A stretch of DNA of 64,000 nt from assembly GCA_950097015.1 (NCBI GenBank), contig CATNEN010000034.1, forward strand, positions 1,302,001-1,366,000, given 5' to 3'. This stretch comes from Macrostomum hystrix (Eukaryota > Animalia > Platyhelminthes). How positions within the stretch are numbered: position 1 is the first letter of the stretch; every line of letters starts with the position of its first letter. Under the pieces are notes generated by a model. It was not told the DNA's origin and did not search any database. It saw only the letters and a list, made by a program, of their open reading frames with translations. Made by a program: the position numbers and the translations under genes. This document shows, in pieces, positions 1,169-42,394 of this stretch.

Positions 1169-12372
<11,204 letters not shown>

Positions 12373-33482: not shown

Positions 33483-36036
33483 AGGATCTGGGGGAATGGA
33501 TAATCCAGTCAGAAGATCTGGCGCGGCCCTGAATACTCAAGTCTGAGGATCTGGGAGAATGGACAATCCAGTCTGAGGATCAGGGAGAATGGACAATCCA
33601 GTCTGAGGATCAGGGAGAATGAACAATCCAGTCTGAGGATCAGGGAGAATGGACAATCCAGTCTGAGGATCTGGGAGAATGGACAATCCAGTCTGAGGAT
33701 CTGGGAGAATGGACAATCCAGTCTGAGGATCTGGGAGAATAGACAATCCAGTCTGAGGATCTGGAAGAATGGATAACCCAGTCTGAGGATCTGGGAGAAT
33801 GGACAATCCAGTCTGAGGATCTGGGAGAATGGACAATCCAGTCTGAGGATCTGGGAGAATAGACAATCCAGTCTGAGGATCTGGGAGAATGGATAATCCA
33901 GTCTGAGGATCTGGGAGAATGGACAATCCAGTCTGAGGATCTGGGAGAATAGACAATCCAGTCTGAGGATCTGGGAGAATGGATAATCCAGTCTGAGGAT
34001 CTGGGAGAATGGACAATCCAGTCTGAGGATCTGGGAGAATGGATAATCCAGTCTGAGGATCTGGGAGAATGGACAATCCAGTCTGAGGAACTGTGAGAAT
34101 GGACAATCCAGTCAGAAGATCTGGCGCGGCCCTGAATACTCAAGCCTGAGGATCAGGGAGAATGGATAATCCAGTCTGAGGATCAGGGAGAATAGACAAT
34201 CCAGTCTGAGGACCTGGGAGAATGGACAATCCAGTCTGAGGATCTGGGAGAATGGACAATCCAGTCTGAGGATCTGGGAGAATGGACAATCCAGTCTGAG
34301 GACCTGGGAGAATGGACAATCCAGTCTGAGGATCTGGGAGAATGGACAATCCAGTCTGAGGATCAGGGAGAATGGACAATCCAGTCTGAGGATCAGGGAG
34401 AATGAACAATCCAGTCTGAGGATCAGGGAGAATGGACAATCCAGTCTGAGGATCTGGGAGAATGGACAATCCAGTCTGAGGATCTGGGAGAATGGACAAT
34501 CCAGTCTGAGGATCTGGGAGAATAGACAATCCAGTCTGAGGATCTGGAAGAATGGATAACCCAGTCTGAGGATCTGGGAGAATGGACAATCCAGTCTGAG
34601 GATCTGGGAGAATGGACAATCCAGTCTGAGGATCTGGGAGAATAGACAATCCAGTCTGAGGATCTGGGAGAATGGATAATCCAGTCTGAGGATCTGGGAG
34701 AATGGACAATCCAGTCTGAGGATCTGGGAGAATAGACAATCCAGTCTGAGGATCTGGGAGAATGGATAATCCAGTCTGAGGATCTGGGAGAATGGACAAT
34801 CCAGTCTGAGGATCTGGGAGAATGGATAATCCAGTCTGAGGATCTGGGAGAATGGACAATCCAGTCTGAGGAACTGTGAGAATGGACAATCCAGTCAGAA
34901 GATCTGGCGCGGCCCTGAATACTCAAGCCTGAGGATCAGGGAGAATGGATAATCCAGTCTGAGGATCAGGGAGAATAGACAATCCAGTCTGAGGACCTGG
35001 GAGAATGGACAATCCAGTCTGAGGATCTGGGAGAATGGACAATCCAGTCTGAGGATCTGGGAGAATGGACAATCCAGTCTGAGGACCTGGGAGAATGGAC
35101 AATCCAGTCTGAGGATCTGGGAGAATGGACAATCCAGTCTGAGGACCTGGGAGAATGGACAATCCAGTCTGAGGATCAGGGAGAATGAACAATCCAGTCT
35201 GAGGATCAGGGAGAATGGACAATCCAGTCTGAGGATCTGGGAGAATGGACAATCCAGTCTGAGAATCTGGGAGAATGGACAATCCAGTCTGAGGATCTGG
35301 GAGAATAGACAATCTAGTCTGAGGATCTGGAAGAATGGATAACCCAGTCTGAGGATCTGGGAGAATGGACAATCCAGTCTGAGGACCTGGGAGAATGGAC
35401 AATCCAGTCTGAGGATCTGGGAGAATAGACAATCCAGTCTGAGGATCTAGGAGAATGGATAATCCAGTCTGAGGATCTGGGAGAATGGACAATCCAGTCT
35501 GAGGATCTGGGAGAATAGACAATCCAGTCTGAGGATCTGGGAGAATGGATAATCCAGTCTGAGGATCTGGGAGAATGGACAATCCAGTCTGAGGATCTGG
35601 GAGAATGGATAATCCAGTCTGAGGATCTGGGAGAATGGACAATCCAGTCTGAGGAACTGTGAGAATGGACAATCCAGTCAGAAGATCTGGCGCGGCCCTG
35701 AATACTCAAGTCTGAGGATCAGGGAGAATGGATAATCCAGTCTGAGGATCAGGGAGAATAGACAATCCAGTCTGAGGACCTGGGAGAATGGACAATCCAG
35801 TCTGAGGATCTGGGAGAATGGACAATCCAGTCTGAGGATCTGGGAGAATGGACAATCCAGTCTGAGGACCTGGGAGAATGGACAATCCAGTCTGAGGATC
35901 TGGGAGAATGGACAATCCAGTCTGAGGACCTGGGAGAATGGACAATCCAGTCTGAGGATCTGGGAGAATGGACAATCCAGTCTGAGGATCTGGGAGAGTG
36001 GACAATCCAGTCTGAGGATCTGGGAGAATGGACAAT
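33483..36036. repeat. 30-bp minisatellite (GTCTGAGGATCTGGGAGAATGGACAATCCA) with higher-order units of 603, 783 and 783 bp
   Basis: The junction AGAAGATCTGGCGCGGCCCTGAATACTCAAG recurs at 33511, 34114, 34897 and 35680. Confidence 0.96.
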
Positions 36037-36263
36037 TTTGTAAAATGCTAACTCAGTAAGCAGAATATTTGACAATCGCAGTAAATTAACTATTATAGTA
36101 ACTTTGAACGCACAAAAGATTATACAATAAAACAAACTTAGTTAACGTAAGAAAGACTGTCCCATAAAACAGGGAAAAGTATGAGAAGAAGGAATAACAA
36201 TACTTAAATTCTTCTTAAACTACAAGTAAAAAGGTAGTTTAAGTAGTCCTTGGATTTGTCAAA

Positions 36264-39200
36264 TCAGGTGGTCTTGCTCTCCTCTGGATCCGGCAACTTT
36301 TGCAGATGGCTGATTACTTCGTTGACCTGAATGAAGTTAGAAAACAATTATTAGCGTCTAAAGAATATAAGAATACCAATACTCAATAACTGGGAGGGGC
36401 GGCACTAAGGGACTGAAAGGAGTGGCCCTAAAGTGGTCCTGAAGGATAAAGAATGGCCCTGAAGAAACAGGAGTGGTCCTGATGGATAAAAGTGGCCCTG
36501 AAGGAACAAGAGTGGCCCTGAAGGATAAAGAATGGCCCTGAAGAAACAGGAGTGGTCCTGATGGATAAAAAGTGGCCCTGAAGAAACAGGAGTGGTCCTG
36601 ATGGATAAAAAGTGGCCCTGAAGGAACAGGAGTGGCGGCCCTGAAGGAACAGGAGTGGTCCTGGTGGATAAAAAGTGGCCCTGAAGGAACAGGAGTGGCC
36701 CTGAAGGAACAGGAGTGGCCCTGAAGGAACAGGAGAGGCCCTGAAGGAACAGGAGAGGCCCTGAAGGAACAGGGGGTTCCCTGCGGGAGTAAACTCCAGA
36801 AAGCGGATTATCTTAAATCTATCTTCAGGATGAATGGAGTGGGTGAGGCGTTTTGGGATTGAACTACCACTCACAGTTTTAAAGGCCTTGCCGCCGGCAG
36901 TGTACCTGTGACTGCGGACCCGACTAGCCGGCGACAGAACGTGCAAGTGCAGGTGAAAAATCGAATTGTAGGGTGGCCAGTGAAAGCCGCATCTGCAGAA
37001 TCCCCGGGTCGGGATTGCAAAGAGAGTGGAGAGGGTGGGAGAATATTTAGCGAATTGGTCAAACTTACGGACACAAACCACGGCGATTTTGAGCCGTATT
37101 TGAGTCCAGCTGAGCAGCCCATGGTGGAGACTGGACTCAGGAAATGCAGGTGAAGATGGTTCACTGACGTGAATGGCGGCCAATGGAACCCGATCCTGCA
37201 AGCAGGCGCGGCCTAATTCAGCACCACTTAAAATGCCTCACACCAGTCACTAGCCCATCAATGCCTCACACCAGTCACTAGCCCATCAATGCCTCACACC
37301 AGTCACTAGCCCATCAATGCCTCACACCAGTCACTAGCCCATCAATGCCTCACACCAGTCACTAGCCCATCAATGCCTCACACCAGTCACTAGCTCATCA
37401 ATGCCTCACATCAGTCACTACCCCATCAATGCCTCACATCAGTCACTAGCTCACCAATCCCTTCACATTAGTCAGTGGCCATAACGTCTAGATAAATAGC
37501 AAAGCTACTGATTGATTGTCATTAGCAAGATGGTTAACTTTGGCAAAAGGCCAATATTTTTTTGATGATCTTCAAAGGAGAATTGCTTATGAACAATTGG
37601 TGACACTTGCCTAGAATCCTGTATATCTGCACCAAGTAAAGATAAAGCTTCCAATCCAGACTTTTCTAGCTGCTTTACAAGAGCAATATCAGTCTTAGTA
37701 AGGTGCTTGCAATCCTTTATATGAACCACTGGGCATGAGAGCAGGTGATAGGTAGCAGCTGGGCTGATGTCATGGAAAACAATTGCTTGGTCATTCTAAA
37801 AGAAAAATATATAATAAATGCATTAAGTGCTAAAATATATATATTACATTGTAATTTTGCTTAGTCATAAACAAAGATAAGTTTCTATAAGTTTTGAAAC
37901 TATGTCTTGCTTTCTGTTTTGGACTTTTAGAAAAAGAACAGAAGCTGCTACATTCAATTAAAGACTTATTCATAGTTGTGTGTTGTTTTAAAAAGTAATA
38001 ATTATGTTAGTATTCTATTTAGAATATTATTCCAAATAATATATTTTTTGTAGCGCTTCTTCTAATTTGATATTTAATACATTTGATATTTGTGCACTCT
38101 CCTAATAATTAAACTCCTCCTCTTAATAATTCATAATGTAAATGTCTAATCTAACTTCTTTACTTATTACTTCCAGACACCTACTATGACCTATATAATC
38201 AATATTCTGTACCCCTTTTTGGGTGGGCTGGTACAAACTACTGAAATAGTTTGGGTAGTGTGGCTTTAACACAATAGCTTTGGCCTAATGCCAGTAGTAT
38301 TCTAGATCTTAGATCTAGGCAGTTCTGGAGATGCTACTCTGTACTCGGGCTTTCCTCGGATTGGATTGTTTGCAGTTTCCACTTACTTCAGAAATAAGTA
38401 AAGCTTTGAGAGTGCTCACATGGAGATATGAACTGTTTCTATAATAGGCTTTTATAGAGTATTCCTAGTGAAATCAGTCTATATATTTATACTAAACTTC
38501 TTGCTACTATTCTAGGTATATACTCAGTATATTTGCATAATTTGAACAAAATGAATATTATTATTGTAGGGTAAATGTATCATCAACTGAACAGTGTATC
38601 TTCAAAACCGAACAATCTGAATTTTGACTCCTTCCTTGGTCTTGTGCAAGACAGAAACAAGCTATTGTATTTCACAGAACAACTATTTTGAATGTCAATG
38701 AAATTATTTACAAACTAAGGCATGACATGCAATGAAGCATTAAAAGGAAAGAAAGATATGGATGTTTCAGTAGAAATTCTTATCACAAAAGAATACTTTT
38801 TGACAGAATTTTTTCAGCATGTACTTTAGACTAAGATTGTATGTGGGTGCTTTCCAATTAAATTACCATAAATGTAGTTATTCATAGAGCATGAAAAATG
38901 CTTTCAAATGACATAATTCAGGATAGATCACTCCTTAAAATAAGATTAAACCACTCACTCAAATTTTAAAACCCAACATCAAATTCTCTGTTTGGCTTGA
39001 AGATACATGAAAATCATCATTTGTTTTTAGATGAAAAACATGAATAACTTTTTTCTATTTGACAAAATTGCAAAAGCAGATACTATTTAGAAAGACAAAA
39101 CAGTTTTCTATAACTTGGCTTTTGATTTAATCATGATATCTTAAATAGAAAATCTGTAGCTTAGGTTTGAAGTTAAAAAAATGCATATTCTTATTCGGTT

Positions 39201-39485
39201 GATGATACATTACCCTATGCACAGCATATTTCTAGCATGGATTTAAAATTGACTATTGACGCCTATTGAATATTCATAATTATATACTGATTATAATTAT
39301 TTAAAAAGTTAAAAGTGAACATAAATATTTTGAGTATTTCAATTTTAAAAAAATAGGCTAAAATTTTCATATATGAGTACACTTACTTGTAAAACGATAT
39401 CCCTATGCTGTCTTTTTTTATCAATAATGTCACAAAAAACACAATGCTTTTGCTTCATAACCCTGAGCTCTTTGGATTTCGGCAT
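36264..39485 (-). CDS. HINT3: HINT3-like histidine triad nucleotide-binding protein with two alternative catalytic exons (157 or 154 aa)
   Basis: Exon 1 39485-39387 (MPKSKELRVMKQKHCVFCDIIDKKRQHRDIVLQ). Exon 2 37795-37611 (NDQAIVFHDISPAATYHLLSCPVVHIKDCKHL...; GC donor AG|GCAAGT). Exon 3A 37195-37069 or exon 3B 36992-36875. Exon 4 36326-36264 (VNEVISHLQKLPDPEESKTT*). The CxFC, DIxPAAxxH and GFHWPP...HLHLH motifs match the HINT3 subfamily. Confidence 0.9.
36415..36775. repeat. About 20-bp tandem repeat (GGCCCTGAAGGAACAGGAGT) in HINT3 intron 3
   Basis: Directly visible. Confidence 0.88.
36875..36992 (-). CDS. HINT3: HINT3 alternative exon 3B: (R)CGFHWPPYNSIFHLHLHVLSPASRVRSHRYTAGGKAFKT
   Basis: Acceptor TTCTGCAG, donor GTGAGT, 118 nt, phase 2 to phase 0, intact HxHxH. 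Confidence 0.85.
37069..37195 (-). CDS. HINT3: HINT3 alternative exon 3A: (R)IGFHWPPFTSVNHLHLHFLSPVSTMGCSAGLKYGSKSPWFVS
   Basis: Acceptor CTTGCAG, donor GTAAGT, 127 nt, phase 2 to phase 0, intact HxHxH. Confidence 0.88.
37234..37455. repeat. 28-bp tandem repeat (ATGCCTCACACCAGTCACTAGCCCATCA) in HINT3 intron 2
   Basis: Directly visible, about 8 copies. Confidence 0.92.
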
Positions 39486-40564: not shown

Positions 40565-42394
40565 TCATTTAAATACCTCGGAAATAAAGTTGGTGTTCAA
40601 CATGTAATGCTCATAGCAGCATGGTCTCATCTGTCCACTGTCCGACTTTTGCATCGATGAATACGGATTTTTGTGCCACTTCCACGTCCTGAAGCCTAGA
40701 TCGAACAAGCCAAACAGAATCTGGATCAAGCGGCGATAATTAGATTTCCTTTGTAAAAACGCATCCGTGTGAGTCTCGAACATCAGCTGCTTCACTCTTT
40801 TCAGACAGCCGTCCTTAAACGCCCGCTCAAGCGCTGACCATTCCGAGTACTCAACATCGATTTTTAATATGTCAATAGTTCGATTGCCGGGCTCAATCTC
40901 CTGGAATAGATCACACAAAGAGCGCATTTTCCATCCAGCTTTTGTCGTCTGTTTGCTTGATGAGAGGCCAATCAGGTAGAACCATGACGTTCGTTTTCTC
41001 TTGTGGTCTTTGAGCTTTGTCATGCTGGGGTCGAACATGTGCACTCTGCAGCGATACTTATCCGCCAGAACATCGTCATACTTCCAGACGTAGTTGATTC
41101 CGAACGAAAAAGCAACGCAACCACCCTTGGATGAACGGATGTCGAACGGCGCACTAAAACAGACATCCCAGCCGCCGTCGTCTGCGTCGCCGACTCGCCG
41201 ACTGTAAGGACAGAAGAGGTGCTGTTGTTCCACCAGCTGGAAGTACATGTTATCAAGCTCTGCTGGCGACATAGCGGAGAGGTTCGTTCGACGCATTGCT
41301 CTCAATTGGTCGAATCCTGGGCTTCTAGAGATTCGGAGGTCCTTTTTCGGGAGTTCAATTGGATCACGCCTTGCATTTCTAATCACTGTACTCCTATGGA
41401 TAAAGTTTATATTAACATAGCTAAGGCTGGCGCTAGAAAGCTCCCCTGTGACGTTGTACAAACTCCACAACCGAAAGCCGGCACTGTGCAAGCCTATCAG
41501 AGCCAGGACGTTGCTTCTAAGCTGGTCCGCAGTTGGCCACAATGCCCTCGGTGAAGTGCGAATATTCAACACCAACTGCTTCGTCATGTTTAGCGACCCA
41601 TCGCTCGCTATCACCTGCAGAAAGGACCAGTCACCTGGCCAGATATTAATCTTCAGCACCTCAATCACAGTTCTGTCGGCCTTGAATCGTTTAAGATAGC
41701 CCAAATATGTGTCCATTCTGACCTTGCCTCCAGCAGGCGTGCCGATAAGACCCTCCGTCAGTAGTAGCACTTGTTCGCTGTGCATGTGGCCGACCTGATG
41801 CGCAGACGAGTCAAACACTAGTACAGAACAGCCCTGGCTAGTGGCTAGGTCATCTTCAAACTCCAAGCCCTGGGTCTTGTTGGACCCGAACGAGAAGCCA
41901 TAGCAGGGCTGGCGAGGCCGGAAGGGGCCAGCCAGGCACAGTTTGTGACCTGACACGCCAGCGCGACCACTCAGCGAGCGGAAAAGCACTCGACGCCCGA
42001 GTCTGCGGTGTGTCGAACAGTCCGCAGTTGGCAGTCCCAGCAGCTGCTCAAATATGTTCTCCAGGCTCTCCACCGGCATGCCGTATAGCTGGTGGTCTTG
42101 AAGCAGGTTCGGTAGGTCGGCCGTTGCAATCGACACGTAGCCGTCGAAGTAGCGGTAAATCACTCGCGCGCCATCAGAACTCAGTACAGACTCCGTCGCT
42201 GAGTCCTCATCAAAATTCATCCATGTTGCGATGGATTTTTTCTCTGCTGTGAACAACTGGCTTCTGCTCTGAATGGCGACAGTCAGGACGGCTGCAGCCA
42301 CGAAAAAGGCGAATCCTCGTAGAGCTAACCTCTTATGCGAATGGAATTTTGTCAGCCGCGCCAACTGCGGCTCAGCTAAGATTCGCTTTAGCAT
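40565..42394 (-). CDS. METTL24: METTL24-like (Methyltransf_22-type) protein, 609 aa, single exon, N-terminal signal-anchor and two tandem methyltransferase-like domains
   Basis: The C-terminal domain has RRVGDADDGGWDVC, AFSFGINYVWKYD, VHMFDPS, IDILKIDVEYSEW and VKQLMFETH. The N-terminal repeat has GHKLCL, YGFSFGSN..LEFEDDL, VLVFDSS, IEVLKINI..GDW and TKQLVLNI. A hydrophobic segment GFAFFVAAAVLTVAI lies near the N-terminus. Confidence 0.85.
   Translation of the reverse strand: MLKRILAEPQLARLTKFHSHKRLALRGFAFFVAAAVLTVAIQSRSQLFTAEKKSIATWMNFDEDSATESVLSSDGARVIYRYFDGYVSIATADLPNLLQDHQLYGMPVESLENIFEQLLGLPTADCSTHRRLGRRVLFRSLSGRAGVSGHKLCLAGPFRPRQPCYGFSFGSNKTQGLEFEDDLATSQGCSVLVFDSSAHQVGHMHSEQVLLLTEGLIGTPAGGKVRMDTYLGYLKRFKADRTVIEVLKINIWPGDWSFLQVIASDGSLNMTKQLVLNIRTSPRALWPTADQLRSNVLALIGLHSAGFRLWSLYNVTGELSSASLSYVNINFIHRSTVIRNARRDPIELPKKDLRISRSPGFDQLRAMRRTNLSAMSPAELDNMYFQLVEQQHLFCPYSRRVGDADDGGWDVCFSAPFDIRSSKGGCVAFSFGINYVWKYDDVLADKYRCRVHMFDPSMTKLKDHKRKRTSWFYLIGLSSSKQTTKAGWKMRSLCDLFQEIEPGNRTIDILKIDVEYSEWSALERAFKDGCLKRVKQLMFETHTDAFLQRKSNYRRLIQILFGLFDLGFRTWKWHKNPYSSMQKSDSGQMRPCCYEHYMLNTNFISEVFK

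What the first reader, a model, noticed from the sequence alone, without database searches (positions are those of the whole stretch)
36875..37195. HINT3-like gene has two tandem, mutually exclusive exons each encoding the catalytic histidine triad
Seen: exon 3A (37195-37069, IGFHWPPFTSVNHLHLHFLSPVSTMGCSAGLKYGSKSPWFVS) and exon 3B (36992-36875, CGFHWPPYNSIFHLHLHVLSPASRVRSHRYTAGGKAFKT). Both have canonical AG/GT sites and identical phases (2 to 0), and each completes the upstream Arg codon and joins exon 4 in frame. Including both shifts the frame to a TAG inside 3B; skipping both gives an early TAA and no triad. The 76-nt intron between them has its only branch-point-like words (TTGAC at nt 7-11, CTAAA at nt 19-23) right beside the 3A donor, followed by a long pyrimidine tract. 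Established: this geometry sterically enforces mutually exclusive splicing (the alpha-tropomyosin exon 2/3 mechanism), and HxHxH plus the downstream C-terminal loop set HINT catalysis and substrate specificity. Inference: one gene makes two nucleotide hydrolases with the same N-terminal half but swapped active-site/C-terminal loops. Both triads survive despite strong divergence, implying selection on both. I know of no described case of this for HINT3.
Basis: partly seen in the sequence, partly recalled or inferred. Interest (0 to 1): 0.85.

Follow-up and report, generated by a model that had tools for sequence, protein, structure and literature searches.

The report
Flatworm HINT3 with two alternative catalytic exons
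A Macrostomum flatworm's HINT3 nucleotide-hydrolase gene has two tandem copies of the exon that encodes its catalytic histidine triad; RNA uses one or the other, never both in the data, and both copies are conserved in a second species, so one gene makes two enzymes that differ at the active site.

Summary
On the minus strand, exon 3A (37195-37069) and exon 3B (36992-36875) are homologous. Each encodes GFHWPP...HLHLH, and each is in the same phase with AG/GT borders.

RNA-derived contigs from three runs of one study carry all four predicted junctions: 2>3A, 2>3B, 3A>4 and 3B>4. They show no 3A>3B junction and no 2>4 junction. The 3B form has the higher contig depth.

The orthologous Macrostomum lignano locus has the same two exons, separated by 56 nt. 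Synonymous sites are near saturation (pS 0.47 and 0.79), while pN is only 0.088 (3A) and 0.061 (3B). Both exons are therefore under purifying selection.

Scallop and amphioxus HINT3 genes have a single exon with the same borders, so the duplication is lineage-specific. 3A is the ancestral type. 3B is derived: it is 3 residues shorter, has a basic tail and has lost the Trp of the WF motif.

Flatworms are reported to splice introns under 75 nt, and the M. lignano intron has a normally placed TTAAC. Both exons are 3n+1 long, so a frame/NMD safeguard is at least as likely.

This is a new member of a known kind. The scan has noted two other mutually exclusive exon clusters in this genome, in different genes.

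The parts
39387..39485 (-). Exon 1, coding part (ATG at 39485; 33 codons; phase 0 donor caa|gtaagt). The 5' UTR continues upstream.
   Evidence: Sequence. Joint 39387>37795 seen in three runs on 626-631-nt contigs. Homologous block at L001 4790-4864.
37611..37795 (-). Exon 2 (185 nt): N-terminal half of the HIT domain, ending in 'ag' of the split Arg codon. The donor is GC (ag|gcaagtgtca).
   Evidence: Pfam DcpS_C 3.1e-10. Joints to 36992 and to 37195. The GC donor is identical in M. lignano.
37196..37610 (-). Intron 2 (415 nt, GC-AG), mostly a 28-nt minisatellite (37232-37474).
   Evidence: An unspliced contig covers 37365-37639.
37069..37195 (-). Exon 3A (127 nt, 3n+1): the ancestral-type triad exon, peptide as quoted in the finding.
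   Evidence: Joints 2>3A and 3A>4 in X2-X4, and 3A>4 in X1. M. lignano orthologue 86% identical; pN 0.088, pS 0.47.
36993..37068 (-). 76-nt intron between the alternative exons: strong donor gtaagt, TTGAC at nt 7-11, CTAAA at nt 19-23, then a C/T-rich stretch up to ctgcag.
   Evidence: No contig joint removes this intron. No unusual RNA fold (z = -0.69). The M. lignano counterpart is 56 nt.
36875..36992 (-). Exon 3B (118 nt, 3n+1): the derived triad exon, peptide as quoted in the finding. It is 3 residues shorter than 3A and has a basic tail.
   Evidence: Joints 2>3B and 3B>4 in X2-X4, with higher contig depth than 3A. M. lignano orthologue 90% identical; pN 0.061, pS 0.79.
36327..36874 (-). 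Intron between 3B and exon 4 (548 nt), mostly a 20-nt minisatellite (36432-36773) whose units end in ttccttcag|g. CTAAC lies just before the exon 4 acceptor.
36264..36326 (-). Exon 4, coding part (20 codons plus TGA at 36266-36264), shared by both isoforms. The 3' UTR continues to at least about 36108.
   Evidence: contigs cover 36108-36326.

Best explanation
This is the HINT3 orthologue of a Macrostomum flatworm (not M. lignano itself).

The exon that encodes the last two strands of the HIT fold, the HxHxH catalytic motif and the helix and strand after it was duplicated in tandem. The duplication happened before this species and M. lignano diverged.

The two copies are spliced in a mutually exclusive way between the shared exons 2 and 4. 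This gives a 157-aa isoform A with a canonical tail and a 154-aa isoform B with a shortened, basic tail. The isoforms share residues 1-95 and the last 20. Both keep every residue of this exon that is invariant in the family (G, H, P, the three His, and the Phe), so both are probably active hydrolases with different substrate or partner preference. That functional difference is inferred, not shown.

How exclusivity is kept is unresolved. Both exons are 3n+1 long, so including both or neither breaks the frame. Such RNAs would yield truncated products and could be removed by surveillance. The short intervening intron, with its branch-point-like word next to the 3A donor, may add a steric block. 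I rate frame/NMD plus splice-site competition as more likely than a purely steric block.
For: Shown:
- Gene model and frames.
- HIT/DcpS_C hits for exon 2, 3A and 3B.
- The best named relatives are all HINT3, at 40-50% identity.
- Exon-exon joints 1>2, 2>3A, 2>3B, 3A>4 and 3B>4 in three runs. Each alternative exon sits on one contig with about 30 nt of exon 2 and about 28 nt of exon 4. No 3A>3B or 2>4 joint was seen. Contig depths are 34/24.8/39.5 for 3B against 16.2/6.9/12.4 for 3A.
- The M. lignano locus L001 has both exons, the same borders, the same GC donor and a 56-nt intron between them.
- Selection: 3A pN 0.088 against pS 0.47 (p = 6e-6); 3B pN 0.061 against pS 0.79 (p = 2e-13); for the 3B-specific tail alone, pN/pS is 0.04.
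- Pecten and Branchiostoma HINT3 genes have one triad exon with the same borders.
- A family HMM built without Macrostomum scores isoform A at 175.9 bits and isoform B at 154.1 bits.
- All columns of this exon that are invariant in the family are kept in 3B.
- The model of M. lignano isoform A has pLDDT 94.7. The exon covers strand 57-61, the loop, the triad strand 73-77, helix 84-90 and strand 97-99. The closest solved fold is the aprataxin HIT domain.
Against: The RNA evidence is assembled contigs from three runs of one study, plus one contig from another organism label. Contigs drop rare forms, so absence of double inclusion or double skipping is not proven. Depth is only a rough measure of isoform ratio.

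Only two species could be compared. No enzymatic or protein-level evidence exists for either isoform.

In the double-inclusion RNA the stop lies only 51 nt before the last junction. In the skipped RNA the stop lies in the last exon. An EJC-type NMD rule would therefore be borderline or inapplicable.
Confidence: 0.85

Rival explanations
1. Steric enforcement. The branch point used for exon 3B lies some 22-36 nt from the 3A donor, too close for U1 and U2 complexes to assemble on the same intron. The 76-nt (or 56-nt) intron can then never be removed and the exons cannot be joined.
For: In the window, the only strict or near-consensus branch words of the intron are at nt 7-11 and 19-23, followed by a long C/T-rich stretch. 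The intron is short in both species, 76 and 56 nt. A pairwise alignment puts CTAAAT opposite CTATAAT of M. lignano at about the same distance from the donor. No 3A>3B joint was seen. The design is documented for OGDH, with distant branch points 25-41 nt from the donor under a threshold of about 50 nt in vertebrates (PMC7969005).
Against: The ~50-nt threshold is a vertebrate figure. Microintrons under 75 bp are reported in flatworm genomes including M. lignano, with peaks near 37 nt in flukes (PMC6530080), so much shorter donor-to-branch distances are tolerated in this phylum. The M. lignano intron has TTAAC 20 nt before its 3' splice site, an ordinary position. In C. elegans only introns under 40 nt are counted as too short (PMC4165533). 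Branch points here are predicted, not mapped.
Confidence: 0.25
2. Competing RNA base-pairing (docking site and selector, as in Dscam or 14-3-3xi) chooses one exon.
For: In the window, 25 nt just upstream of 3A (37241-37217) can pair 11/12 with 36854-36843, just after the 3B donor, and 12/13 with 36443-36431, near exon 4.
Against: Matches of this length are about what chance gives in 1.35 kb; my own estimate is roughly 2 expected. No corresponding or conserved pairing exists in the M. lignano introns. No conserved intronic blocks exist apart from the splice-site flanks. The inter-exon intron has no unusual fold (z = -0.69 and -0.42).
Confidence: 0.05
3. One of the two exons is a non-functional leftover or splicing noise, or 3B belongs to another paralogous transcript.
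For: 3B departs from the family consensus: 22 bits lower, a 3-residue deletion and no Trp. The M. lignano annotation contains only the 3A form (P0001).
Against: 3B is the better-conserved exon (pN/pS 0.08; tail 0.04). It has the higher contig depth in all three runs. It is joined to the same 30 nt of exon 2 and the same ~28 nt of exon 4 as 3A. The window holds no other HINT3 copy. 3A is also conserved and expressed.
Confidence: 0.03

Closest known systems
Homologous mutually exclusive exon pairs that arose by tandem exon duplication (for example the 22 homologous clusters in C. elegans, PMC4165533, and the human MXE catalogue, PMC5740500)
   Same: Adjacent homologous exons of near-equal length and equal phase. 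Each is joined to the same flanking exons. The frame is kept only by single inclusion. The exon lengths are 3n+1.
   Different: The gene is different: no HINT3 case was found in the paper library. The swapped segment carries the catalytic motif itself rather than a regulatory or channel-lining segment.
OGDH exons 4a/4b and alpha-tropomyosin exons 2/3 (steric block by a branch point close to the upstream donor)
   Same: A short intervening intron. In the window, a branch-like word sits near the donor and is followed by a long pyrimidine-rich stretch. An enzyme is switched between two forms.
   Different: Branch points are not mapped here. The organism belongs to a phylum with microintrons, so the vertebrate ~50-nt threshold need not apply. 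The M. lignano orthologous intron has an ordinarily placed branch word.
HINT3 (adenosine 5'-monophosphoramidase) of other animals, in the aprataxin/DcpS branch of the HIT superfamily
   Same: Single HIT domain of about 150 aa. GFHWPPF..S..HLHLHV motif. Intron positions around the triad exon shared with scallop and amphioxus. The closest solved fold is the aprataxin HIT domain, TM about 0.7.
   Different: Other animals examined have one triad exon. Branchiostoma has a whole-gene tandem duplicate instead. Several relatives with Trp-less tails are separate proteins rather than alternative exons.

Membership tests
HINT3 (HIT superfamily, DcpS_C/aprataxin branch) | HIT-fold domain recognised by family profiles | tested here: met
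   Exon 2, 3A and 3B each hit Pfam PF11969 DcpS_C above its cut-off. Whole isoforms score 176 and 154 bits against a HINT3-family HMM. The model matches aprataxin, DcpS and HINT1 folds.
HINT3 (HIT superfamily, DcpS_C/aprataxin branch) | Histidine triad HxHxHxx with hydrophobic x | tested here: met
   HLHLHFL in 3A and HLHLHVL in 3B. These His columns are invariant in 46 relatives.
HINT3 (HIT superfamily, DcpS_C/aprataxin branch) | Closest named relatives are HINT3, and there are no extra FHA, zinc-finger or DcpS N-terminal domains | tested here: met
   Named hits at E 1e-23 to 1e-26 are all 'HINT3' or 'HINT3-like'. The gene model gives 157 and 154 aa with nothing beyond the HIT domain.
HINT3 (HIT superfamily, DcpS_C/aprataxin branch) | Hydrolysis of AMP-amidates or acyl-adenylates | not testable with these tools
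   Needs recombinant protein assays of both isoforms.
Mutually exclusive exons from tandem exon duplication | Adjacent homologous exons with the same phase and similar length | tested here: met
   127 and 118 nt, both phase 2 to 0; 16/24 identical, E 5e-12.
Mutually exclusive exons from tandem exon duplication | Each exon is joined in RNA to the same upstream and downstream exons | tested here: met
   Joints 37611>37195, 37611>36992, 37069>36326 and 36875>36326 in X2, X3 and X4.
Mutually exclusive exons from tandem exon duplication | No mature RNA contains both exons or neither | tested here: inconclusive
   No 37069>36992 or 37611>36326 joint among the contigs. Contigs drop rare variants, and only one study was available.
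Steric-hindrance MXE (alpha-tropomyosin / OGDH type) | The branch point of the downstream exon lies closer to the upstream donor than the spliceosome's minimum spacing in that organism | tested here: inconclusive
   Motif prediction only. The window has CTAAA at nt 19-23; M. lignano has TTAAC at nt 33-37 of 56. The minimum spacing in Macrostomum is unknown. Flatworm microintrons under 75 bp argue that it is small.
Docking-site/selector MXE (Dscam type) | Conserved complementary intronic elements | tested here: not met
   Only chance-level 12-13-nt complements in the window. None correspond in M. lignano. No conserved intronic blocks.
U2/U12 spliceosome-incompatibility MXE | One flanking intron has U12-type splice sites | tested here: not met
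   Donors are gcaagt, gtaagt and gtgagt, and acceptors are cag, all U2-type; there is no [AG]TATCCTT donor.

The most novel reading that the evidence does not exclude
The duplicated exon lets one flatworm gene encode two catalytically competent HIT hydrolases with different substrate ranges. The derived, strongly basic isoform B, which is the more abundant one here, would have been retuned toward a polyanionic substrate such as adenylated nucleic acid, as in its structural neighbour aprataxin. Exclusivity would be hard-wired by a conserved donor-proximal branch point, even in a phylum that can splice microintrons.
Probability: 0.15. Interest if true: 0.65.

Novelty: new member of a known kind. 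Interest (0 to 1): 0.5.

Why it matters
Mutually exclusive exons usually retune channels, motors or regulatory surfaces. Here the swapped cassette is the catalytic strand and C-terminal elements of a small nucleotide hydrolase whose physiological substrates are still poorly defined.

The two isoforms are natural, selection-tested chimeras: the N-terminal half is identical and the active-site half differs. That makes a ready-made experiment on what sets HINT3 specificity.

The case also adds a verified example to the emerging picture that Macrostomum genomes hold several mutually exclusive exon clusters. It offers a short, tractable intron for asking how exclusivity is enforced in an animal that tolerates microintrons.

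Tried and rejected
1. Typical short-intron length in this species. I scanned the window for 30-99-nt GT..AG intervals bridging open frames and checked flanking ORFs against Pfam. No usable confirmed short intron came out, so the minimum intron size rests on the literature.

2. Close relatives beyond M. lignano. Two word-indexed protein searches and one exhaustive representative search found no other Macrostomum or close flatworm protein. Proteins with two matched stretches turned out to be tandem genes or fused models, not double-exon cases.

3. Loci that gave no information. P0156 is an intronless copy on metagenome contigs. The P0174 look-up found nothing.

4. Base-pairing models gave chance-level results and nothing conserved.

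5. Structure prediction of isoform B. It was not done because the spliced protein has no reference and long sequences may not be typed. Only M. lignano isoform A (P0001) was modelled.

6. Reads tools.

Full report
**What is there**

Reading the minus strand gives a compact five-exon gene:
- Exon 1: 39485-39387, with the ATG at 39485.
- Exon 2: 37795-37611.
- Exon 3A: 37195-37069.
- Exon 3B: 36992-36875.
- Exon 4: from 36326, with the TGA at 36266-36264.

Both exons have cag| acceptors and strong GT donors (gtaagt, gtgagt). Both begin with the third base of an Arg codon started by exon 2 and end in phase 0.

The two exons are homologous (16/24 identical, E 5e-12). Exon 2, 3A and 3B each hit Pfam DcpS_C, the profile that covers HINT3, aprataxin and DcpS.

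Splicing in silico gives four outcomes:
- Isoform A, 157 aa.
- Isoform B, 154 aa.
- Both exons included: a TAG inside 3B, 51 nt before the last junction.
- Neither included: a TAA 11 nt into exon 4 and a 98-aa product without the triad.

There is no third copy of the exon in the window.

The run search found four runs of one study (organism B) that hold 36-47% of the sampled words, and one run of another label (organism A). Laid on window:36100-39560, the contigs of X2-X4 behave as cDNA.

Joints seen in the contigs:
- 39387>37795, with GT..AG ends.
- 37611>36992, with GC..AG ends.
- 37611>37195.
- 36875>36326.
- 37069>36326.

All five occur in each of the three runs. Each alternative exon lies on a single contig flanked by about 30 nt of exon 2 and about 28 nt of exon 4. 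This is the bubble expected of two alternative paths between shared exons. No contig joins 37069 to 36992, and none joins 37611 to 36326.

Contig depths are 34/24.8/39.5 for the 3B path and 16.2/6.9/12.4 for the 3A path. 3B therefore appears to be the major form in these samples, although depth of contigs is a rough measure. X1 carries only a 3A>4 contig, at about 97% identity.

There are two caveats. This is one study of assembled contigs, so rare double-inclusion or skipped forms cannot be excluded. An unspliced contig across the exon 2 donor (37365-37639) shows that some pre-mRNA or retained intron is present.

**Organism and conservation**

The exon 2 peptide finds one close protein, a partial M. 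lignano protein of the 3A type (P0001, 81% identity). The window is therefore from another Macrostomum species.

The M. lignano locus L001 contains the same layout:
- Exon 2 with the identical GC donor (ag|gcaagtgtca).
- Exon 3A at 8049-8175.
- A 56-nt intron.
- Exon 3B at 8232-8349, with intact AG/GT borders.
- Exon 4.
- A block homologous to exon 1.

Between the two species, 3A is 86% and 3B is 90% identical in protein. Nei-Gojobori counts:

| Segment | pS | pN | Fisher p |
|---|---|---|---|
| Exon 3A | 0.47 | 0.088 | 6e-6 |
| Exon 3B | 0.79 | 0.061 | 2e-13 |
| 3B tail (14 codons) | 0.83 | 0.031 | 3.3e-6 |

Both exons have been kept by purifying selection on the protein since the split. 3B is the most constrained part of the gene.

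**Origin**

In scallop (L004) and amphioxus (L005) HINT3 genes, the triad exon has the same borders (R|xGFHW ... WFVT|) and is single. Amphioxus instead has a whole-gene tandem duplicate.

A HINT3-family HMM built without Macrostomum scores isoform A at 175.9 bits and isoform B at 154.1 bits. B shows a 3-residue deletion just after the triad and loses the Trp of the WF motif, while the invariant Phe is kept.

3A is thus the ancestral exon and 3B a derived copy. The duplication is older than the divergence of the two Macrostomum species but is not shared with the mollusc or the chordate.

**What is swapped**

A confident model of M. lignano isoform A (pLDDT 94.7) shows that the exon encodes:
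- strand 57-61 (the GFH strand),
- the WPPF..S loop,
- the triad strand 73-77,
- helix 84-90,
- strand 97-99.

Exon 4 adds the last helix. The 3B deletion and its cluster of Arg, His and Lys residues fall in the helix after the triad. The segment has K+R of 5 against 2 in 3A, and a pI of 10.5-11 against 8.2-9.2.

The closest solved fold is the aprataxin HIT domain (TM 0.68-0.72), then DcpS, then HINT1 (sequence search). That the two isoforms differ in substrate or partner preference is an inference. That the C-terminal region sets specificity is established for HINT1 (from my own knowledge of that literature), not for HINT3.

**How exclusivity is kept**

Three known mechanisms could be tested on sequence.
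- U2/U12 incompatibility is not met: all sites are U2-type.
- Docking/selector pairing is not supported. The window has only chance-level 12-13-nt complements. None correspond in M. lignano. There are no conserved intronic blocks. The intervening intron has no unusual fold.
- The steric model remains possible but is weak.

For the steric model: the window's intron has its only good branch-like words within 23 nt of the donor, and the intron is short in both species.

Against it:
- The ~50-nt spacing limit is a vertebrate figure (PMC7969005).
- Microintrons under 75 bp are reported for flatworms including M. lignano (PMC6530080).
- In C. elegans only introns under 40 nt count as too short (PMC4165533).
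- The M. lignano intron has TTAAC 20 nt before its acceptor.

Both exons are 3n+1 long. In C. elegans, 14 of 19 such clusters rely at least partly on NMD. I therefore rate frame/NMD plus competition of the two acceptors for the weak GC donor as somewhat more likely than a purely steric block. This is unresolved. The stop positions (51 nt before the last junction, or in the last exon) make an EJC-type rule borderline.

**Comparison and novelty**

This is a textbook-type homologous mutually exclusive exon pair in a gene for which I found no such report. The library has no paper linking HINT3 to mutually exclusive splicing, and none on such splicing in Macrostomum. The annotated M. lignano protein holds only the 3A form.

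Earlier notes of this scan describe two other mutually exclusive clusters in the same genome, in different genes. I did not test those. I class the finding as a new member of a known kind. It is moderately interesting because the cassette carries the catalytic motif of an enzyme with poorly known substrates.

**Verdict**

The mutually exclusive use and the selection on both exons are supported. The proposed steric mechanism and the functional divergence are not demonstrated.

Noticed in passing
window 37232-37474, 36432-36773, 33540-36036; L001 6276-7943, 8399-9287: Minisatellites fill both introns that flank the exon pair, and the 3' flank. They are 28 nt x 8.6, 20 nt x 17 and 30 nt x 83 copies. 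The orthologous M. lignano introns also hold minisatellites, but their unit sequences are unrelated. Units of the 36432-36773 array each end in a 3'-splice-site-like ttccttcag|g.
   Followed up: partly
window 37605-37613; L001 6167-6178: The exon 2 donor is a GC-AG type (ag|gcaagtgtca). It is identical in both species and is used in RNA. A weak donor upstream of the alternative pair may matter for the choice between the exons.
   Followed up: partly
window 37365-37639: A 275-nt contig runs unspliced across the exon 2 donor into intron 2 in runs X2 and X3, with a shorter one in X4. Its depth is about a fifth of the spliced forms. It could be a retained intron or pre-mRNA.
   Followed up: no
window 38536-38767: Contigs of much higher depth (up to 203) with many mismatches and loose ends lie inside intron 1. 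This is probably a dispersed repeat transcribed elsewhere.
   Followed up: no
window 40565-42394 (-): The upstream neighbour is a 609-aa single-exon ORF with a Methyltransf_22 domain. It is syntenic with L001 2534-4192 in M. lignano.
   Followed up: partly
L005 11131-14417: Branchiostoma floridae has a second HINT3-like gene in tandem whose triad reads HLCLH, so the middle histidine is lost.
   Followed up: no
proteins P0058, P0085, P0093, P0098, P0105, P0108: A group of HINT3 relatives from unnamed sources has a Trp-less tail of the form APASQI..YKF.PG..RF, loosely reminiscent of the 3B tail. In those organisms the variant tail is on a separate protein.
   Followed up: no
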